This document shows positions 1 through 63,047 of a stretch of 64,000 nt of DNA, piece after piece. A program made the position numbers and the translations under genes. The notes beneath the pieces are model-generated. The model had not been told where the DNA came from and made no database searches. It saw nothing but the letters and a program-made list of their open reading frames with translations. Each line of letters starts with the position of its first letter. Position 1 is the stretch's first letter. This DNA comes from Ascidiella aspersa. Taxonomy: Eukaryota. The stretch covers positions 6,324,001-6,388,000 of the forward strand of contig OZ004608.1 of the NCBI GenBank assembly GCA_963924565.1, given 5' to 3'.

Positions 1-112
1 AATTAAGTATAGTGACACAAATAAAAATAAATTCTTCAATAAATATACAGTTTTTAAATTCGTCTGTGGCCCACCTAAAGAGTTTCCATGGCCCACTGGT
101 TGAGAACCGCTG
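1..112. mobile_element. Right part of a hAT-type MITE (full copies at 22914-23250 and 27187-27523)
   Basis: Ends in GGTTGAGAACCGCTG, the complement of the CAGTGGTTCTCAACC TIR seen in the full copies. Confidence 0.7.
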
Positions 113-613
113 CCCTAGTGGTATAATTGTAAATATCTGCTAAAGCTGTATTTCATAGTTTGACACTATAAAGAGTTTTTAAAGTTTCTCGAGCTTTTAG
201 GTATTCCGTTTTATTATGATTTGTTTTAAAGTATCCTACCATGCTTAGTTGCTAGTCTTACTCAACAAAACTAGGGATGGGAATAAAAAAATATTGGTTT
301 GTGCTATGAGTGTTAAGAACGAAACCAGCATAAAAAAAACGGGAAATTGTAAGGAACACGATTATTTTGAAGTACCGGTACAAAAACCTTTTAAAATAAT
401 GGAAAAGCAAACTATATACGACTGACTGTAACAAAAATATGGGATCTACTTGGAAAATAGTTTTGTTTATAACAATTTTAATTGGATGTGTTGCATGTTT
501 CAACTAACATTTTCAAATGCTGGAAGAGCATCTTATTTTTTGGGCGACAACCTATTTGAGGTTCGAATTTACTTTACTTTGAGGAGCAGATGTAATTTTC
601 TATTGCTTCTTAC

Positions 614-51300: not shown

Positions 51301-52878
51301 GAACTTAATACTGTCGTCATCGCAAAGAGCTTGGAGACTTCCTCGGTGGTGTCCAATGTATCGAACAAGCCTTGTGAATCCATCAAAAATAAGGCAATCT
51401 AAATAGAAGCATCAAAATACCAATAATTTCTGTAACTCTTTAGCCATAGGGAAAACACTAAACAACAAACTTTATTTGAAATTATGCACTCTTTTTGCCG
51501 CTTTATCTCATCTATCGCAATAATACTTTAAACGAGTTTTATTTATCAATAGGTTTCTCATTTTATGTTTTTTGCCATTTTTGTCAACATATGTGCCCCC
51601 AAACGTAAAAGTCATTTACCGTACTTTTTCATTTTCTGTGATGTTGATCCAAAAAGGCTTTTTGGAAATCCAGATGCCCTTTGTTTGAGCATCTGCTCCT
51701 GACCTCCATTGGAACAATGAATTTAGTTTGCCATCCAGATACGTTCTCCAATTCTGTTCCTGTAGTTAATTTTTACTGACTTTGTTTATGCTAATGCCAT
51801 TAATAGTTTATGTTATAGATGACACTAAAGTTGGAATAAAATCAATAGAAGGGTTGTCGACCTTTAAACGAAAATTGTTTGACAATATTTACCGTCAAGC
51901 ATAAAGCATAATATCTGAAGTAAAAATATCCCAAGCATCTACTATTGGAACCGCATAGGCTGCAAGTGTTGCTCCGGTTACTCGGTTTACGCTTATCTTG
52001 TATGTTAATGTTTGTTGCAAGAATTATATAAAATTACCTCACCGATTTCCAATTTTGCAAAATAGTCAGCAAACAAGCTGAGAAGGAATGACTTTCCTGT
52101 CCTACTTTCTCCGATGATTGATAGCACAGCAATTGGAGAATCCTTCACCACCGGCTGCCCAAATATAAATTCAATCGCGTGGTGGTCAACGGTGAATGAT
52201 CCGTTTTTGTCTAAGCTGCAAATCTGCTTCGAAAGTTCTTTAAAACATACATCAAGTTAGAGTGTTCAACTGCTTTTACATGTACTATAATATGATATTA
52301 ACATACCTTTGTGAACGTCGAAGGCCAAAGTATGGCTGAAACAAAAGGAATAATTATACAAAAAGAGAATACACTTTGGCGTTTTTGTAAACAACATATA
52401 CAAGTGAAATGTTAATAGTTTGCGTTATTTAGCACAGCACAATTAACCAGCATTAGAAACACTACAGATACCTCGATAGATGTGTGACCTTCAGGATAGA
52501 TTTTCCTGGAAAAATGTCTGGTTTCTCCGCATGCATACTATTTAGCACCTTCTGAAGGTTATTTTTCGCTTTTCCCGAACGAAGCATCTCCTTGAACAAG
52601 CTAGAGATTGCTTTGCGAATATAAAGTTTGAAATTTACCTGTCCTTTCGCCTCGTTAAGGAATACAAGTTGGAAGTCGTCATTTTGGAGCGCTGCAAATA
52701 AAATTGCAGCTGACCTTCCCTCTTTGAGCAAATCGATCACCTTTTGGTTCCAAGCCAAACCAACTTTGGAGATATTTTTCTCAAACTCGTACCATTGATC
52801 ATCATTCCAGTTATTTGCCCTAAACTCGGCGACACTTTGATAACTTATCGTCACCGGTATTGTTATAATTTCAGCCAT
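48354..52878 (-). CDS. Atlastin/RNF112-like GTPase B with an N-terminal ~135-aa (TRADD-N-like) domain and a C-terminal hydrophobic hairpin; interrupted by a poly(A) insertion with an in-frame stop (possible pseudogene or truncated allele)
   Basis: Exons 52878-52472, 52335-52307, 52237-52038, 51759-51625, 51398-51243, 51170-51120, 50863-50629, 49680-49475, 49388-49317, 49253-49053, 48951-48880, 48755-48354. G1 GESRTGKS, G2 FQWRSG..QTKGIW, G3 DSQG, G4 LLRDW. TAA plus A27 in the eighth exon. Confidence 0.85.
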
Positions 52879-54940
52879 TGTTGCCTGCAAGTATTTTTGA
52901 GTTAAATATAAGTTAGATAAATATGAAAAGAATGATTTTTAACAGAGTAAAAATTCGATCAGCTGGCTGTAGTACTAAGAAATACACACTTTTCTAAAAA
53001 AAGATATCTACACATTGAAATGCATAATTTCTTTTAACTACTTTTTAACTTAAGGCTGCATTACTACTGTCACACTTAATCATTATATAGATTTCACTGC
53101 GTTTGGCGTCAACCTTTCATCCAGCCTTTAGGACGCGAATGTCGTTCTACGCTTTGTGGGCGACCATGTTATATGACGTCGGACAAAGGCTTACCTAACC
53201 CGGAACAAGAAAAAAGCTTATGTCCTGTGAAATCAGAGCGAATATTGGTGGGAAATGTCTGGGCATGTTTTGAAAGCAGTTTCAAAGGTTAACGGTTCAT
53301 TTGGAGGACCGTTAGAAATAACCTAATGCTTAAACAAACGTTTACAAAGGCGACAAAAGCTATTTAACTGCGCAACAGTAAGGCAAAAATACAATGTTCC
53401 ATCGCCCCATTTTTATTTTTAACAATTTTAGATTGTGATGCTGCGGCTTTGCATCCAACAAAACTACCGTAAAGCCAGAAATATTTCAGTTGGGATAATA
53501 CTAAGACAATTTGATGCAATATTCACATTTTATAATAAGTTACAAAACTTTCTATTCCCCTACCCAATCTATTATCCTTTATCCTCTCCAATTGTGATGT
53601 GACAATGCGCAGGGCGCCGGTGAACCACTTCTATAGAGCTATAGTCATTAACAAACAACACATGCAAAAGAGTATATTATACGTACGTTTTGGGGTATAG
53701 GTCCAGGACGTCATTAGTACGAAATCTTTAATAATAAAAATTCGGTTGAACAACCCCTGTGCGAGTAATTGGGATCCTTTCCTCATAGGCGGCCGAAAAT
53801 TTTTGCAAAGTTACTAAACTTCATTGTAAGGCAAGAATAAACTTTCTGTATACTGTATAATTAAGAGTTTGAAAACAGTCCAGCACTAAAAATCGTTATG
53901 AGGAACAAAGAACACAAACTTACACGCAGTAATGATAATTTGTAGGGCTACGTAAAACTGATGTCGCATTGTACAACTATGCTATTTTGCTCGTTTGGAA
54001 TAAAGTTGTTTTAGATCTTTTTTATTAGCTTTTTCGTTCGCTTGGATTGTACATAGAACACTGAGATATGTATTCTTTTCTAGAGATAACTTGCATTATG
54101 TAATTTCTCTGCGCGTAATTTTTGAAACCTAAAACCTGATAGCGTTGTAGGATATGTAAAGGACAGGCTGATGCTAAACTGTTATGTGTTAATTAAAAGT
54201 CCCTATTAGCCTGTAAAATGAAAGACCACAATATCACACAACGCAGAGTTTTTAAGAATTTCAAAATAACGGCACTGCGTTATTCGATACATTCTGCCAA
54301 TAGGTCAACCGATTCCAAGCGTTACTCAGGGGCGCCATCCCACTATCGATTCGGCTCATTATAACTGGAAAGGAATTAGTCACTTCTATCCTCTTATTTA
54401 TAATTTCCTGAATGTTAGACCTAGGTAAGGAATCCAAAATCATCTGGAAAAGTTGATGTTTATCAATCTATACTTACCGATCTCTTTTCACCCATAAAAT
54501 GCCTTCCCCATATAATCGCAGTTTCTTGACTGTTTGGAAGATGCAATTAAGTCGGCACCGTTCGAGTTTTGTAAAGCGTGTACTTAATGAATCTATTTCG
54601 GACCAAGGATTGTAGACAGACAGCCTTGTTAAGGAGGCTACATCGCGCCAAACACTCCGAAACAGACTTTGTAAACACTTTAAAGCATTGCAGAATCGCA
54701 ATATATATAAATTTTTTGTATTCAGAAAGATGTTGTGAATCATAATTAACCCCTGGATCCATTGGTTGGATTTAATCTAACTTACTGTCGGTTTGCCCGA
54801 AAATTCCAAACTATTCTTTGTACCGGTATTAAAAATACAAATTATTTAGCTAAAATTTTTGAAATTTTTTTAAATTAAAAAAATCCTTTAAAAAAATTCT
54901 ATAAAAAGATTTAGGATGGCTTGTTTGTAAACCATTAGAC

Positions 54941-55378
54941 CAGTGGTCGGCAAACTGTGGGCAAGCCATTTTATTGGGAGAGTTACTTTCGATTAGCTGT
55001 TTTCATGTAGTTGTGAGCCGCGTGATAGCCGTACATTCATTGTACTAGTTTTAACAGTTTTGTGGCGTAGAATTTTTAAATTGGCTCAGCTTGTAAAGGC
55101 CCACGTGCCAAATGTGACCTTGAGAAAGCCGAACTGTACCAGCTTTTAGGTAAACAAAAAAAATTTCAAGCTTTCCGCGTATATTCTTCTTTTGTAGTAT
55201 GTTTTACATGCAATTTGACTTGGCAGTGTTTTGGGAATCGAGGCGCCGTCTAATATTTCCCCTTAAAATGAAATATCCTGAATCCGACACTGTTTCGGTA
55301 GTGGTTTTACGTAGTGGTCATCCAATAGCTCTAAAAAGACTACTTTGGGCTGCGACATAAAAAGTTTGCCGACCACTG
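54941..55378. mobile_element. hAT-type MITE
   Basis: TIRs CAGTGGTCGGCAAACT / AGTTTGCCGACCACTG; TSD CATTAGAC/CATTAAAC. Confidence 0.85.
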
Positions 55379-55922
55379 CATTAAACCATCTGTAAAAATT
55401 TTCAACACATTTTCTGATTTGGACTATAAGACTTAATATCAATTATATGGAGTTATGTATATTTTGTACCAGATCCTCGTTGAAATGACTGCCCTAAGCC
55501 TTATTTAGATGTCATTGTGGTGGCTATTTTTTTGTTAACTATAATTATATAATCGATTATTCAACATTCCGGTATCAGAGTTCTTTCTGTTGTTGTTTGT
55601 CAGTTGCATGTGTTATAAGTTATAAACAACTTTTCAGTGAAAAGTTATATGGTTTATATATTTCCGCCATTTGATTTCACACACAACCTAATTTCTTTGG
55701 CAGCTTGCCTAACACAACTCAGCCTGTCTCGCCAAACACAACCCGAGAATTGTTTTTCCAAAACTGATTGATGTTTTTACATAGAATTGTGCCAAATGTC
55801 GGGGGACTGCATTTCAAAGCCAATCATGTCAAGCACAATACTAATCAAAATCATTGTGGTTAGGCTTGTATCATAAACGAAATAGCAACTCGTGTTTACA
55901 TTCTAATCATTGCACGCACAAC

Positions 55923-56157
55923 CATGGGCGCCCGCAGGGGGGGGGGGGGGCAAGTGCCCCGCCCCTGGAATTTCAAAATGCGATTATTAGTATTATTTAT
56001 AAGTGTAATATGTATTACTTATGAAGGTTAAAAATATTATACATTATCCATTGCCCCCAGTGCCGTCTTCAGGGGGCGGGAGTTCTTACCCCCTTTTTGT
56101 AAGTGATATTATCGTTTTGTGTTCGTTTTTGTCATGGTTTTTTTGCGGGCGCCCGTG
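55923..56157. mobile_element. MITE with CATGGGCGCCCGCA / TGCGGGCGCCCGTG ends
   Basis: TIRs plus perfect 8-bp TSD CGCACAAC. Confidence 0.85.
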
Positions 56158-57832
56158 CGCACAACCAATATAATCTGTGTTGGTTTATGTTTGGTTGTTC
56201 AGATATAGGTCTGTACAAACATATACACAGCGCTTTGCAAAGCAGCTGGCTTGCCGCCCGCGAATGTTTTCCTGATAACAAAACGCCGTTTAATGGTGAA
56301 TAATCAAACGCGCAACAATGATCCATCACAGTGCTCTTAAACCTTTTGTGGTTGATCAACCCTTAAAGTTGTTGTGACGAACTCATGCAGCATTAGCTCC
56401 TCCAGCCGATCTTGCTTCTCCCGCCAACGTCCAACATCCAGCAGAAGATAAAAAAGAAAAACGAAACGCCGAAACGTTATTTTAGATATAATTAACCAAT
56501 TTGCCATTGGATGACGCCCCTGAGCAGCAAAGATGCGGGATCGGTTTACCCTTTTGCAGAAGGTATACAATAAAGCTCAAGTTCTCCAAAATAGTATAAT
56601 ACGTTTTTTTTATTGACCAATCGAAGGCTAATAAAGCAGATTTTACCATACCCTCTGTAAAATTACCAAAACGAGCACTAGGGACTTAAATTTAGCGTTT
56701 ATTAGTCCTGAGCCTAGAATAAACTCCTATTTTTTACGTGCCAACATCTCGTTGTATGCTTAGACAAATTAAATTTTACATGGAAGAGCAAAGTGCTTAT
56801 TTGATCCAAAAACGATGTGCCTATTTAATGTCATTTTAGCACAGGCTTCGGACACTTTATAAAAGTTTGTTTAGATTCTTTATATCAACATACAGTATAC
56901 AGTTTTATTTTATTGGTCGTGTAACATCGTAAGTCTGTAAATCATTCTTTTGTTTGTGAAATAGATGCTGAATTGTTTTTACGTCGTGTATGTAACATCT
57001 TGCAAATAATATTTATCCCATTGCAATAAAGTGATTTGAAAAGTTCTACGAAGTGCAGGGTAAATATCTTTACCAACTTTGGAAATTTAACGATGTTGAT
57101 GTTGCCACGTTGATGTTGAAACTACGCAGCTGTTACTGCACTTCTTAAGCTGTTATTAATTAACCCAAGTAGTCCTCGTGACGAATTGTCGTGGGCAGTA
57201 ACCGATATTGGATATAATAAGCGAGTTGAGATTGTGCGCTACCAGATTAAAGCCTACCGAAATATTGCCAGATTGATAGTAAAGCTGTAAAAATCAAACT
57301 GATTACAGATTTATGTTTATATTTGTGAGAAAATGAAACCAAATCAAACATGTCGTTAATCAACAGTGAAAAAATGAATGGCATAAAGTCTAGACTGCCA
57401 GACTGATTTGAGGCTAAGATTATGTTTAAAAGGGCCTTCGAATTCAATCAGACAGCGATTCATCTTTGGTTCCTGCTTTGGAAGGGAGTAAAGTTGAATG
57501 GGAGTGAAATCGGCTGGGTAATAAGCGCCCATTTAAAACGGCTTACATCAATAGTACTACATTTGTTTGGCCCATTTGAAGTGATGACGATCTGACTTAA
57601 ATTAAAGAAAGCCATTCGGGAGGCATAGTTTAATTGGAAAGTTAAATAGGGTATTAGTGAGTGTAAAAACGCCTAACACCGATCATAGTATATTTTCGAT
57701 AATAGTATATACAATTGCCGAGCAATACGTTTGAACAAATGAGGTGGGTCCCACTAATAACATTGTAGCCTAACTTTCATGGTTGCGAGCTTGGACTCAG
57801 TTATAACGATATTTATTCATGTAAAGGCAGAG

Positions 57833-60800
57833 ATGTCTGACTTGGAAACGATAAAAGTTACTTTAATCTATAAAAGTGACGCTGAGTTTAAGGCGAGCAA
57901 TTGGGGTGATGAGGAATGGCTTAAGTTTGGAAAAAGTTTACCGCCCAACGGGTTTGGTTGGAGTGAGAAGGGCCACGAAAAGCTAAAGGCTGGGGGTGCC
58001 ACTGCAATTTTGTTTGTGGCGCTGCAAGACAATGGTCACAGGCCGACGTCGATTTCCGAGAAGCAAGGACAAGTTAACTTTGACCTTAAAGTTCTGAAAG
58101 ATTTAGAAGACTCAATAAATGAATACATACGGTCAGGAAAGTTTAAGTTCAAGGTTCAGCAGGCTCTGGATAAAATGCATGCCGAGATGAGCACTGTTTT
58201 TCCAGGTGGATTTGCTCTGACCGTGACGTCAATCACAAGGTATCTATAAATATTGGACTCAAAAAACGGTTTTTAAGCGTTTTTCAAAGTTTAAAACATG
58301 TCGCACAAGTCTCTAGAAACCGTGAACTTTTTCCTTTGTTAGTGGAAATTGAAATGAGTTGCGAGATATGGGTGGGAAACATATTATGGCACCAGCCATA
58401 ATTTTGCCTATTGAAAGTAAAATCATAGGCTTGTGAAAAGTAATAAAATTTACCGGGAGAGAAAATCATGATTGTCATGTTGACAAAGATTGAACTTTAT
58501 TTTTAGTTTTGCTTACTAGTACCATAGTTACTATTCAAAATTTAATTTGAATGTTTTTATTTTGCTAGTCCTTCTGCTATCATCAACGTCGACAATGGTA
58601 ATTGTTTTGAACTATTTGTTTAATTCGTACTCAAATAAACATTTAAACCGATATTTTATATTTATTTTGAAGAAATTTCACAACAGGTTTGCAAAATGGA
58701 AGACGGTTGTCTAACAGTTGTTCCAGAAGCGATTGAATCGATATTTGGGCAGCCGTTGGTAGACGAATCTCATGTCGCTGTAATTTCCATAACAGGAGAA
58801 GCGAGAACCGGAAAGTCGTTTTTGCTTAGTTTACTATCTCGCTACTTCGCAAAATTGGAGCTAGGAAAGGTAATGATGTACATACAATTTTGTAGTGTGT
58901 CAAATTGTGGAATATATGATACTTATTTATAAATTGGACCATTTCGTTTTATTTCTATGTAAACACACGTGCTGTAATCTCAGATTAACTTTTCTGTTGA
59001 GTTAAAACACAAGTCTAAACCTACAAAAAAGTTAACAAAAACTCATAAAGAGTATTTCAGTCAACTTTGTGCAAATTATAAATTAAAGCCCGTTTTTGGG
59101 TGCAATATAACCAATTTTAATTATTTTTTACGCGTTTCGTACGAGTCTTCACCGCTAACGACTATATAATGTGAACAGAGTTTTGCAGGAACTCTAATTT
59201 CATTGATAACAGTTACGTCATAGAGTAACGCCATGACACGAAAAAACCTAAAAACGCATGACTTCGTGACTCGCGGACCCCCTTTGGGTGCGATCCTATT
59301 GTCTACATTTTAAGTATAATTTGATACTTCGTTTAGTGAGTAGTCTAACATACATTCAACAGGATATTTAGCTAAAATTTTTCTCATTGATTTTCAATAA
59401 AATAATGAACATATGGATATGTTGTTTATTCGTTCCAATTTCCGAGTTTTCGAAGGAGCAGTACACTATGCTTATCATACAGGCAGACGAATGGAAAAAT
59501 GATCTGGATGCAAATGTGAACACATTGTTTAACTGGAGAGGTGGTGACAGCGCACAAACTAAAGGAATATGGATTTCAAAAAAGCCTTTTTGGATTGAAA
59601 CTAAAAATGAAAAAGTGATTGCATTTCAGTTATTTTATATGCTGACGTTCTACATTATTTTATATGTTCTCAGTGCTATATATATGATAAGATATTTCCT
59701 TCATGCACCCCTATTGTATGCCATTTGGGTTGTAGCTTTATTTCTATTCTTTGTTTATGACGTTTGGTGAATTGACTTATTCTCTTCACCCAAACAGAAA
59801 CCACACCAAAAATGGTTACAGCTATTTGTATTGGTTTAGCATGTCATTCTTGAATATTTAATATTCAGATTGCAGTGTTTTTGATGGATTCACAAGGGTT
59901 GTTCGACACAGTTGATACGAACACAGAAATGTCAAAACTCTTTGCTATGAGTGCTTTGTTTAGTTCGTTTCTGACACTAAATGTTGTTAAGAAAGTGTCC
60001 GCCCCTAACCTTCAAGCACTTCAGGTTGGTATGTTTACCATAACTCAACTTTACACAAATCTTAACAGAAGAATATATTTTATTATAGAAGTTTGCAGAG
60101 TACGCTGAAATCTTTTGCGAGCCTGGAGTGAAATATGAGGTAAGAGTAACAAAACAGTGCGCTAAACGACCCTAAAGCAATACATCAATATGTCCTATAG
60201 TTATGGTAATAATTAACCTACATTAAATTTGTTGCCATACCTTGTTTGGTTGATATTATTATCCACTTTGAGTATATGCCAAATTAAAAAAAATATAACG
60301 AAGGGAATTGTAAAATATTTGTAATGTTCATGTTTCTCATGATTTGTACGAACTGGGAAAATACTTTTAAAAACACATAAGACGTATTGCAAAATTATAG
60401 TTTAACTTCTTCGACCCTGCTTAAGACACTTTTTTATATGTTAACTTTACAGTCTCTTCTTATTTTGATACGAGATTGGAACGGAAAAAAATCAGGGTTT
60501 GGCTTTAAGGCTGGCCGAGAACACATAAAATCGACTTTGCAATCTAAAAGTGTGGCCAAAGAAAACAGGAAGGCGTCGGACCAACTTCTAAATTCATTCA
60601 ATAAATATGAGTGCTTTGCTCTACCAGAACCTGGCAATGAAATCCGGAATTCTGATTTTGAAGTCAGCAAAAGTTATAGCTTGGAAGGTATAAACAATTT
60701 ATAATCAATAAGTTAATTTTATATGTTTCATTACACAAAATCATTCATTTTTTATCTGTCAATTAATTTACTGTACTTAAATGGATATAATTTAAACAAT

Positions 60801-62671
60801 TGCTTTTTCAGTATTTGCTTTTCTAGCTCTAGCTCTAGCTCTAGCTCTAGCTCTAGCTCTAGCTCTAGCTCTAGCTCTAGCTCTAGCTCTAGCTCTAGCT
60901 CTAGCTCTAGCTCTAGCTCTAGCTCTAGCTCTAGCTCTAGCTCTAGCTCTAGCTCTAGCTCTAGCTCTAGCTCTAGCTCTAGCTCTAGCTCTAGCTCTAG
61001 CTCTAGCTCTAGCTCTAGCTCTAGCTCTAGCTCTAGCTCTAGCTCTAGCTCTAGCTCTAGCTCTAGCTCTAGCTCTAGCTCTAGCTCTAGCTCTAGCTCT
61101 AGCTCTAGCTCTAGCTCTAGCGAAAAAAGTCTCTTGTGAAAAAAGTGCGCACATTTTTGAGGGCAGTTCAAAATGTGTTTTTATTTCTAAATTTCTATTT
61201 CAAAGATTATATAACTGAGTTTTTTTTTCTGTTTTCGCACATTACTTTTATTAAGTAACGTATGTTCGCCAGGTATGTGAAAATCCCACAGTTTTGGGGT
61301 TACAGAAGCCAGAGCATAGTGATAAATGAGCCGCATGCTGCCCAAGAGCTGCTGGGTACCGACCGATGAGCTAGCTCAGTGATTTTAAAACTGGCTTGCT
61401 TAGGCCCCTAGGGATGCATGAGAGGGTTTAACTGGTCCGCATAACAATCTCCTGTTTAAAGGCAGATAACACATTATTATTCTTATTGAAGTTTATTCAT
61501 AAAATCAAAAATATTTTGACAGCTTTGTGCACAAGAAATAGTATGAGTACCGGATTTAATGTTAGATTGCACTGTAGGACTTCAATTTTCGCTCTTATGA
61601 ATTACTGGGGTATGCCGATATCTGAATAAAATATACGGGGTTCGGTTGAAAAAGTATACGACCACCGGGCTAGAGGGCAGCATATTTTTTTATTTAAATA
61701 GCAGGACCTTTTTTGTTTTGAGTATGCCATGGTAGCAGAAATCAGTTAAGTAAACTTTATGTGTATTTAGACAAATTTCCAATCTCACCAGGACAATGGT
61801 TTTTACATTAATTGTTATTTTAAAAACGTATTTAACTTATATTTCTAGTTTTATCGCGTTCACAAACCCAGGACGACTAATGAACAAAAACATAAAGATT
61901 TTTTTTAACTTTGTTGTACGAAATATTGTCAACCAAAGACAAATTGAGTTAAAGCACTGATTTAAAATAGCGCGTCATAGCTAAACTAGTGACACACTTG
62001 GCTATATCAGGCCAGCGAAATTAAGCCAAATGTAACAACATACATTTTTTATATATTGCCAAATATGTTTATTTTTCAGATGTTGGAGATCTGTTTCTAG
62101 AACACGTAGAAGATCTTGCTAAAGCTCTGTCAAATGAAATTACTCCAAAAAAATACGGAAAAACTGTTTTAAAAGGAAAAGATATGGCAACCTTGGCAAC
62201 GTTTTGCGAGAAAAAAATGAGGCTTCCTAACGTCGACATAAAACTGTGTTTAAAAAAAGTAATAAGATATATTGAGGTTATCATATTTTGGATCTAATTT
62301 ATCTTTAGAACATTTTTAGGGTAAATATGATTACGACGCAGCAAAGGCAACCACAGATTGCATGATGGAATTTATAACAATTTTGAAAAAGGTTTGTTTA
62401 TAAGATACATTTTAATTAATGTATCATTCGTTTATGCCTTTGTTAATCAAACTTTTATCTAACATTGCAGGAGTTTAAGATTTTACGAAAACATAAAAAG
62501 AAGTTTGACAGACAAATGGTGAATGACATTAAAAGCAAATGCTCCGATGAAGTAAAACAAAAATTTGAGGCTTCTCTCGCTTCAAAAGATGCTGCTTTTC
62601 GAAAAGAAAAGTTACAACTTTTTGATCAACTCGTGGACAGCTATTGTGAAGAAATTGTTGAAGAAATAGAG
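57833..62671 (+). CDS. Atlastin/RNF112-like GTPase C with an N-terminal ~135-aa (TRADD-N-like) domain; last exons presumably beyond the window
   Basis: Exons 57833-58239, 58569-58597, 58673-58869, 59483-59614, 59869-60024, 60089-60139, 60453-60687, 62080-62258, 62320-62391, 62471-62671. Same intron positions and phases as gene B. G1 GEARTGKS, G2 FNWRGG..QTKGIW, G3 DSQG, G4 LIRDW, CFALPEPG. Confidence 0.88.
60822..61121. repeat. Perfect hexanucleotide microsatellite (TCTAGC)50 in an intron of GTPase C
   Basis: 300 bp of uninterrupted units. Confidence 0.97.
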
Positions 62672-63047
62672 GTAATTCAAATATGTCGGGAAAATATTTT
62701 ACTTTTTTTTTATTATTATTGTTTAAAATTTGAACTGATAAAGGACTTTCTGTATAGTTCTACCTGCAATGTAAATAGATTTCACCTGCAAAGTGGCAAT
62801 AGTTTGCAAAATCTACCTGAATGTTTCTCGATTAAACAAAATAATGAACCCATCATGCTGTATGATCTTCATCACTATTGCGTATTACGCTGAGCATGTC
62901 AATCTAAATTGGTTATAATCTAGTGTTTGTGCGATTATAAAACAAATAAATATCGCAATTCCGTTCGTTGACTATTTGTCGCTGATTGCGGCTTAATTGA
63001 CCTAAAGGTTTCCAACAGTCTGTATGGAAGCGGCATTTAATCGAATC

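What the first reader, a model, noticed from the sequence alone, without database searches (positions are those of the whole stretch)
52472..58239. Atlastin-like GTPases fused to an N-terminal TRADD-N-like adaptor domain
Seen: the 142-aa and 156-aa ORFs are not stand-alone genes. Each has a 407-nt coding exon (52878-52472 minus; 57833-58239 plus) ending in AG|GTATC, spliced through a 29-nt linker exon into the GTPase exons in frame. The two domains align without gaps (about 56/135 identical by hand count): AILFxALQ...GQVNFxLxh...RSGKxKxxhQxxL...MHAE..hFPG..hLxVT. Knowledge: canonical atlastins have only a short N-terminal extension, RNF112 has a RING, and TRADD-N is an alpha/beta domain that binds TRAF2. 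Inference: the order strand, helix, strand-G-strand, helix-SG-helix, terminal strand fits TRADD-N. That would make these membrane-anchored dynamin-superfamily GTPases that recruit TRAF-type signalling, an architecture I do not recognise as described.
Basis: partly seen in the sequence, partly recalled or inferred. Interest (0 to 1): 0.9.

Follow-up and report, generated by a model that had tools for sequence, protein, structure and literature searches.

The report
Atlastin-like GTPases with orphan N-terminal domain
Two neighbouring genes for membrane-anchored atlastin-like GTPases, part of a large family expansion in an invertebrate genome, each begin with a 135-residue domain that has no detectable relatives; its predicted fold resembles TRADD-N and SEA domains about equally, so the proposed TRAF-signalling link is unproven.

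Summary
Two head-to-head 407-nt exons (57833-58239 +; 52878-52472 -) encode 135-aa domains that are 56/135 identical with no gaps (E 7e-39). Each ends AG|GTATCT and can splice in frame through a 29-nt microexon into a GBP/atlastin GTPase exon. The same N-domain exon, 29-nt microexon and GTPase exon recur in 9 of 10 paralogues in three clusters of this chromosome. That is good comparative evidence for one gene. The only RNA-seq run sampled gave no reads.

The domain is best called a lineage-specific RRM/ferredoxin-fold module, found only on one branch of a family of at least 48 GTPase copies. TRADD-N fused to GBP GTPases was already reported (Kaur et al. 2021). Gene B carries an in-frame stop, and gene A runs past the window's end.

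The parts
57833..58239 (+). Gene A, N-domain coding exon: 135 codons plus 2 nt, ends AG|GTATCT. An acceptor-like site just upstream suggests there may be a non-coding 5' exon.
   Evidence: AlphaFold2 model
58569..58597 (+). Gene A, 29-nt linker microexon, flanked by AG and GT, in frame
58673..58869 (+). Gene A, first GTPase exon with the P-loop GEARTGKS
   Evidence: (Pfam GBP E 3.3e-5)
59483..60687 (+). Gene A, further GTPase-domain exons: 59483-59614 (switch I, TKGIW), 59869-60024 (DSQG), 60089-60139, and 60453-60687 (RD motif)
   Evidence: (best solved matches atlastin-3 and atlastin-1, E 2e-4)
62080..62692 (+). Gene A, helical middle-domain exons (about 62080-62259 and about 62600-62690). 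The last two exons, including the hydrophobic hairpin, lie beyond the window at equivalent positions 65033-65161 and about 65238-65732 (the open frame starts at 65226; L022:1226-1732).
52472..52878 (-). Gene B, N-domain coding exon, ends AG|GTATCT
   Evidence: AlphaFold2 model
52307..52335 (-). Gene B, 29-nt linker microexon
52038..52237 (-). Gene B, first GTPase exon with the P-loop GESRTGKS. It has no Met, so it cannot start translation on its own.
48357..51765 (-). Gene B, remaining exons: GTPase exons at about 51750-51625, 51398-51243, 51173-51123 and 50863-50629; a middle-domain exon at 49680-49472 with an in-frame TAA at 49621-49619 next to an A26 run; and a last exon ending at 48357 with two hydrophobic segments and a 9-residue tail
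37527..45997 (-). Gene C, a third paralogue with the same GTPase exon structure but no N-domain. Its ATG sits right at the start of the exon homologous to the first GTPase exon.

Best explanation
Genes A and B are divergently oriented paralogues from a large lineage-specific expansion of GBP/atlastin-type large GTPases. These proteins end in a hydrophobic hairpin, so they are anchored in a membrane with the GTPase in the cytosol. One branch of the family (three clusters on this chromosome, 10 copies found) has an extra first coding exon for a domain of about 135 residues, joined to the GTPase through a conserved 29-nt microexon.

The domain has no relatives detectable by sequence. It is predicted to fold as a two-layer beta-alpha-beta-beta-alpha-beta (RRM/ferredoxin-like) sandwich with both helices kinked. 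The second kink falls at the family's invariant E..RSG......Q motif.

I infer that it is a cytosolic protein-interaction or regulatory module. It may recruit a partner to the membrane-bound GTPase, or it may gate the nucleotide-dependent dimerisation of the G domain. The family's copy number, clustering and fast-evolving N-domain point to an innate-immunity or conflict role, by analogy with GBP, IRG and GIMAP expansions.

Shown: the exons, their homology, the conserved exon structure, the GTPase motifs, the hydrophobic C-termini and the predicted fold class. Inferred: splicing (no RNA evidence), cytosolic topology, interaction function and immune role. Whether the domain descends from TRADD-N, from SEA or from neither stays open.
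For: The N-domains are homologous with no gaps.

Ten N-domain copies were found in the genome, all on contig C2 at 6.37/6.38, 14.27-14.36 and 31.14/31.25 Mb. All but one are followed by a first GTPase exon in the fetched DNA (the exception, a truncated copy, shows only a second-exon match), and 9 of 10 have a 29-nt in-frame microexon. No copy was found next to any other kind of gene.

Pfam GBP matches the exons, and the best solved matches are atlastin-1 and atlastin-3. The P-loop with Arg, TKGIW, DSQG and RD motifs are all present. The last exons carry hydrophobic hairpins.

The genome holds at least 48 matches to the fourth GTPase exon, arranged in clusters.

Two independent AlphaFold2 models give the same topology: pLDDT 79.1 and 78.4, pTM 0.74 and 0.71. 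All structural neighbours are ferredoxin/RRM-like: SEA, TRADD-N, ACT, S6, IS200 transposase.

Among recent paralogues the N-domain has dN/dS 0.47-0.82, against 0.15 for the first GTPase exon in the two comparisons with enough changes (the third had none and the fourth gave 1.68 on three); the counts are small.

No homologue turned up in Pfam, in the sequences of solved structures, in 1.84 billion cluster representatives, in the word-indexed 5.8-billion-cluster library or in the ESM Atlas.
Against: There is no transcript evidence: zero RNA reads in the one run sampled.

Gene B has an in-frame TAA in a middle-domain exon. It may be a pseudogene or a truncated, unanchored form.

Several copies in the 14-Mb cluster are truncated.

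Gene A has an ATG early in its first GTPase exon, at the position where the N-domain-less gene C starts. An isoform without the N-domain is therefore possible.

The fold rests on predictions from shallow alignments of 4 and 10 paralogues. The immune role and the interaction function are inferred by analogy only. A homodimer prediction gave no verdict.
Confidence: 0.55

Rival explanations
1. The N-domain is a true but highly diverged member of the TRADD-N superfamily. It acts as an adaptor that links the membrane-anchored GTPase to TRAF/MATH proteins, or to other TRADD-N proteins of this genome.
For: The predicted topology and the two kinked helices fit the published description of TRADD-N.

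The best hhalign local alignments with the genome's own TRADD-like_N domains place the turn Gly on their Gly-Ser, and RSG on their [SN]G helix kink. Two paralogues (L003, L004) do have Gly-Ser at the turn.

The domain is cytosolic and N-terminal on an expanded GTPase, and TRADD-N fusions to GBP and AIG GTPases are published. This genome carries at least 41 TRADD-like_N copies and several TRAF genes.
Against: No statistical support at sequence level. The Pfam scans gave no PF09034 or PF20694 match at E<=10, and the genome searches with those models (E<=10 and E<=1) hit none of these loci. hhalign P is 0.31, 0.5 and 0.095. Genome-wide HMM searches in both directions fail to cross-detect the families.

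The defining tiny-residue-Ser motif is Gly-Gln in both window copies and absent in the 14-Mb cluster. The residue equivalent to TRADD Ser67, which contacts TRAF2, is therefore not conserved.

Unlike TRADD-N, which is shuffled among many architectures, this domain is found only on this one GTPase family.
Confidence: 0.25
2. The N-domain derives from a SEA-type domain that was moved to the cytosolic N-terminus of the GTPase.
Confidence: 0.08
3. The 142-aa and 156-aa ORFs are separate small genes or decaying remnants, and they are not spliced to the GTPase exons.
For: Both ORFs run straight into a stop (RYL*) just past the proposed donor. No RNA reads support any junction. Gene A's first GTPase exon has its own ATG, and gene C shows that the GTPase can stand without the domain. 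Gene B carries a premature stop.
Against: The donor, the unique 29-nt in-frame microexon and the acceptor phase are kept in three clusters whose N-domains are only 20-31% identical. The N-domain was found only upstream of GTPase exons. Gene B's first GTPase exon has no start codon. The stop right after the donor is what an intron beginning with GTA(T/A) would give.
Confidence: 0.07

Closest known systems
Atlastins (ATL1-3, Sey1/RHD3 class; GBP-type dynamin-superfamily GTPases of the ER)
   Same: A GBP-family G domain with a P-loop Arg plus TKGIW, DxxG and RD motifs. The best solved sequence matches are atlastin-3 and atlastin-1. A helical middle region is followed by a C-terminal pair of hydrophobic segments.
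   Different: The genes belong to an expansion of at least 48 copies rather than being a conserved one-to-few-copy fusogen. The tail after the hairpin is very short, 9 residues in B. A folded 135-residue N-terminal domain replaces the short disordered N-terminus of atlastins; that comparison rests on my own knowledge.
TRADD-N superfamily (Pfam PF09034, PF20694; Kaur et al. 2021, PMC8195603), including the coral GT4+TRADD-N+GBP+GBP_C protein XP_020614207
   Same: An RRM-like sandwich with kinked helices and a Gly in the beta2-beta3 turn. The position is N-terminal to a GBP-class GTPase in a marine-invertebrate-style gene expansion. Crystal TRADD-N is among the top structural neighbours.
   Different: There is no significant sequence or profile similarity, and the tiny-residue-Ser motif is not kept. 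No Death or DED partner domain is present. The GTPase is atlastin-like with a membrane hairpin, not GBP plus GBP_C. The domain is not shuffled among other architectures in this genome.
SEA domains (PF01390; TMPRSS6, Gpr126, MUC16, IA-2 ectodomain)
   Different: SEA domains are extracellular and often self-cleaving at G|S. This domain is cytosolic, has no Pfam match and has Gln in place of the Ser.
RNF112/ZNF179 (RING plus GBP-like GTPase plus C-terminal membrane segments)
   Same: A GBP/atlastin-like GTPase with C-terminal membrane segments and an added N-terminal module (from my own knowledge, not tested here).
   Different: Its N-terminal module is a RING finger, not an RRM-like sandwich. 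No comparison was run.

Membership tests
TRADD-N superfamily | RRM-like two-layer beta-alpha-beta-beta-alpha-beta sandwich with a four-stranded sheet | tested here: met
   AlphaFold2 models of A and B show E4-14, H26-35/H45-66, E70-77, E80-88, H89-101/H103-118 and E130-134. This is a prediction, not a solved structure.
TRADD-N superfamily | Both alpha-helices kinked | tested here: met
   Each helix is broken in two in both models. The second break falls at the invariant RSG.
TRADD-N superfamily | Conserved tiny-residue-Ser (or Cys) motif in the beta2-beta3 turn; this is the TRAF2-contacting Ser67 of TRADD | tested here: not met
   The motif reads Gly-Gln in both window copies, Gly-Ser only in L003 and L004, and Thr/His-His in the 14-Mb cluster. 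The column is not conserved.
TRADD-N superfamily | Significant sequence or profile similarity to TRADD_N or TRADD-like_N | tested here: not met
   No Pfam match at E<=10. Genome scans with PF09034 and PF20694 hit other loci only. hhalign gives P 0.31, 0.5 and 0.095. Reciprocal genome HMM searches do not cross-hit.
TRADD-N superfamily | Structural similarity to solved TRADD-N that stands above other folds | tested here: inconclusive
TRADD-N superfamily | Binding to a TRAF MATH domain or another partner | not testable with these tools
   The best TRAF-C domain in the genome (L023) is split by an intron, and joining exons is barred. No complex was run.
SEA domain | Match to the SEA profile (PF01390) | tested here: not met
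   No SEA match at E<=10 for any of the 10 paralogues. The single weak SEA hit in the genome lies elsewhere.
SEA domain | SEA fold | tested here: inconclusive
SEA domain | Extracellular location, often with a G|SVVV self-cleavage site | tested here: not met
   The domain starts at the initiator Met with no hydrophobic signal and precedes a cytosolic GTPase. The turn reads GQVNF. Topology is inferred from the sequence.
Atlastin family | GBP-type G domain with P-loop, switch and RD motifs | tested here: met
   Pfam GBP matches four exons, two of them above the curated cut-off. The motifs can be read.
Atlastin family | Closer to atlastins than to other GBP-class GTPases | tested here: met
   For the fourth GTPase exon the first 13 of 14 matches among solved structures are atlastins, led by atlastin-3 and atlastin-1 at E 2e-4 to 8e-4. 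Only one exon was tested.
Atlastin family | Two closely spaced membrane segments near the C-terminus | tested here: met
   Hydropathy of the last exons of B and A.
Atlastin family | C-terminal amphipathic tail after the hairpin | tested here: inconclusive
   Only 9 residues follow the hairpin in B, and about 25 in A. No helix analysis was done.
Atlastin family | Orthology to the conserved ER fusogen | tested here: inconclusive
   There are at least 48 paralogous exon matches in clusters, so these look like expansion members rather than the housekeeping orthologue. No tree was built.

The most novel reading that the evidence does not exclude
The N-domain is a very diverged TRADD-N-type adaptor. 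It turns a membrane-anchored, atlastin-like fusion-class GTPase into an immune signalling platform that recruits TRAF/MATH proteins, or members of this genome's expansion of at least 41 TRADD-like_N genes, to an organelle membrane. No such coupling has been described for atlastin-class proteins.
Probability: 0.2. Interest if true: 0.65.

Novelty: new variant of a known kind. Interest (0 to 1): 0.38.

Why it matters
Large GTPases of the GBP, IRG and atlastin class remodel membranes, and in vertebrates they defend cells against intracellular pathogens. This invertebrate genome has multiplied a membrane-anchored, atlastin-like version to at least 48 copies. One branch has gained a fast-evolving, family-private N-terminal domain.

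If that domain is an adaptor, TRADD-N-like or not, it would show how a membrane-fusion GTPase scaffold can be converted into an immune sensor or signalling hub. It would also extend the published pattern of TRADD-N plus GTPase fusions in marine animals to the atlastin class.

As things stand, this is a well-documented gene family with an unclassified domain, not a demonstrated signalling link.

Tried and rejected
Searches for relatives of the N-domain, all empty:
- Pfam on both window copies and on all 10 paralogues gave only scattered sub-threshold hits to unrelated families.
- HMM searches of solved-structure sequences with 4-sequence and 10-sequence profiles found nothing.
- The profile search of 1.84 billion cluster representatives returned one spurious repetitive protein.
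- The word-indexed search with a single sequence and with the 10-sequence alignment found nothing. That tool only sees proteins of 74-236 aa, so longer fusion proteins are not excluded by it.
- The ESM Atlas gave no usable hit for A or for L003.

Profile and structure comparisons:
- hhalign against this genome's TRADD-like_N domains was run three ways and was never significant.
- Foldseek against the PDB gave no E<=0.001 for either model.

RNA evidence: X3 gave no reads on the exons covered. The only reads fell on intergenic repeats at 54800-56400. The two other runs are genomic DNA.

Complex predictions:
- The N-domain homodimer prediction gave no verdict (score 0.00). This is evidence neither for nor against binding.
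- A TRAF complex was considered and not run, because the TRAF-C domain of the best TRAF locus is split by an intron.

Steps left out: the joined spliced protein was never built or searched, and all searches were exon by exon by reference. Earlier findings of the scan held nothing for this place or these words.
Full report
**1. Setting**

The window is G000:C2:6324001-6388000, from a eukaryotic assembly of about 309 Mb with 33-40% G+C. Short exons and AG/GT-bounded introns show that it is an animal-type genome. The organism's name is coded in the tools and I did not try to uncover it.

**2. The observation**

From the homologous Met codons, the two 135-aa translations align without gaps. They share 56 identities and 87 positives, with E 7e-39.

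Both exons end AG|GTATCT. A 29-nt segment flanked by a pyrimidine-rich AG acceptor and a GT donor follows each: 58569-58597 in A and 52335-52307 in B. It carries the frame into the next exon (A 58673-58869; B 52237-52038). That exon holds the P-loop and matches Pfam GBP.

Gene B's first GTPase exon has no Met, so it cannot begin a protein on its own.

**3. Comparative support for one gene**

A protein search and then a profile search of the whole genome found ten N-domain copies. All are on contig C2: the two in the window, two at 31.14 and 31.25 Mb, and six at 14.27-14.36 Mb, three of which are truncated.

All but one are followed within about 0.5-1 kb by a first GTPase exon; the exception is a truncated copy. 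In 9 of 10 a script found a 29-nt open microexon between AG and GTR (a single candidate in eight of them, two in gene B). This holds even though the N-domains of the three clusters are only 20-31% identical. Exon phase, microexon length and order are therefore conserved across old duplications. I take this as good evidence of a real spliced architecture, with probability about 0.85-0.9.

Direct RNA support is missing. The one RNA-seq run of the species put no reads on B's exons 1-3 or on the start of A's exon 1 in the roughly 6% of the run that was sampled.

**4. The genes**

tblastx between the paralogues lays out the shared exon set. The G-domain motifs are intact:
- P-loop G-E-[AS]-R-T-G-K-S
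- TKGIW
- DSQG
- RD

For the fourth GTPase exon, the best solved-structure matches are atlastin-3 and atlastin-1 at E 2e-4.

Gene B ends at 48357 with two hydrophobic segments and a 9-residue tail. Gene A's last exon lies 1.2-1.7 kb past the window's end, in L022, and also carries a hydrophobic hairpin. So 'atlastin-like, membrane-anchored' holds by sequence.

Gene B as assembled has an in-frame TAA at 49621-49619 beside an A26 run, in an exon that is open in A and C. It may be a pseudogene or a truncated form.

A third paralogue, gene C (45997 down to about 37530), has the same exons but starts with an ATG at the very beginning of the first GTPase exon and has no N-domain.

The genome holds at least 48 matches to the fourth GTPase exon, arranged in clusters. 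Of the eight closest relatives on C2, only A and B carry the N-domain.

**5. What the N-domain is, by sequence**

Nothing matches it. The empty searches were:
- Pfam
- sequences of solved structures
- 1.84 billion cluster representatives
- the word-indexed library
- the ESM Atlas

Within the family the invariant positions are E97, R100, S101, G102 and Q109, with V87 and P124 nearly invariant.

Among recent paralogues dN/dS is 0.47-0.82 for the N-domain. The first GTPase exon gives 0.15 in the two comparisons with enough changes, so the domain is coding but evolves fast. The counts are small.

**6. What the N-domain is, by fold**

Two AlphaFold2 models were made: A with a 4-sequence alignment and B with a 10-sequence alignment. 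They reach pLDDT 79.1 and 78.4 and give the same order of elements:
- strand 4-14
- helix 26-35 plus 45-66
- hairpin 70-77 and 80-88
- helix 89-101 plus 103-118
- strand 130-134

This is an RRM/ferredoxin-like sandwich with both helices kinked.

**7. Direct tests of TRADD-N membership**

- Pfam TRADD_N finds nothing convincing in the genome.
- TRADD-like_N (PF20694) finds seven other loci. A profile built from them finds at least 41 copies on C4, C6, C1 and C3, none at our loci.
- The reverse search with the N-domain profile finds only its own family.
- hhalign between the two families gives P 0.31, 0.5 and 0.095. The first and longest local alignment does put the turn Gly on their Gly-Ser, and it and the second put RSG on their [SN]G kink. 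That is suggestive but not significant.
- The defining tiny-residue-Ser motif, whose Ser contacts TRAF2 in 1F3V, is Gly-Gln in both window copies. It is Gly-Ser only in L003 and L004, and it is lost in the 14-Mb cluster.

**8. Context and precedent**

Kaur et al. [quoted passage not shown] Their table lists a coral protein with the architecture GT4 + TRADD-N + GBP + GBP_C. The general idea of TRADD-N on a GBP-class GTPase is therefore not new. An atlastin-like, hairpin-anchored version would be a new variant.

Their note that TRADD-N profiles also touch dystroglycan and ACT domains in HHpred fits the mixed picture seen here. I know the dystroglycan domain as SEA-like.

Location favours a TRADD-N-like role over SEA, because the domain is cytosolic and sits on an expanded GTPase. 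However, this domain is never found in any other architecture in the genome, whereas TRADD-N is typically shuffled among many.

**9. Verdict**

The gene model is supported by comparative evidence only.

The domain is best described as a lineage-specific RRM-fold N-terminal module of an expanded atlastin-like GTPase family. It is probably an interaction or regulatory domain. I put true TRADD-N ancestry at about 0.25 and TRAF recruitment at no more than about 0.1-0.2.

The joined spliced protein was not built or searched, as required, and all searches were exon by exon. A homodimer prediction gave no verdict and counts for nothing either way.

Noticed in passing
window 49586-49621 (minus strand): Gene B has an in-frame TAA (49621-49619) followed by an A26 homopolymer. 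It lies inside a middle-domain exon that is open in paralogues A and C. This could be a pseudogene, a truncated soluble form or a homopolymer assembly problem.
   Followed up: partly
window 60822-61121: A perfect hexamer microsatellite, (TCTAGC) x 50 with 100% matches, sits in the intron after gene A's fourth GTPase exon. It produces the long poly-Ser, Glu-Leu and Arg-Ala ORFs in the mechanical ORF list.
   Followed up: partly
window 54800-56400: The intergenic stretch between the head-to-head genes holds very high-copy repeats: word depth reaches 10^4-10^5 in two DNA runs, with many internal joints. It carried the only RNA-seq reads in the 6-kb stretch laid. This is probably transposable-element sequence.
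   Followed up: no
window 37527-45997 (minus strand): A third atlastin-like paralogue (gene C) has no N-domain, and its ATG sits exactly at the start of the exon homologous to the first GTPase exon. Two more close paralogues lie just outside the window, with fourth-GTPase-exon matches starting at C2:6315624 and C2:6400370.
   Followed up: partly
G000 C4:3.85-4.12 Mb, C6:31.16-32.11 Mb, C1, C3 (L031-L060): There is a lineage-specific expansion of at least 41 TRADD-like_N (PF20694-type) first exons, many in a tandem array with spacing of about 10-12 kb on C4. One copy (L062) is followed about 3 kb downstream by a 311-aa ORF that I read by eye as helical-repeat; Pfam was not run on it.
   Followed up: partly
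G000, many loci: At least 48 GBP/atlastin-like matches to the fourth GTPase exon lie in clusters on C1, C2, C3 and C6, with about 20 in C6:27.0-27.4 Mb. Several have a single in-frame TAG inside the match.
   Followed up: no
L023 (G000:C1:30714225-30717590, minus strand): A TRAF gene has its TRAF-C (MATH) domain split by an intron just before the YGYK strand: the upstream exon ORF is at L023:2126-2443 and the main exon at L023:1465-1866. It could serve for a later binding test once a cDNA is available.
   Followed up: no
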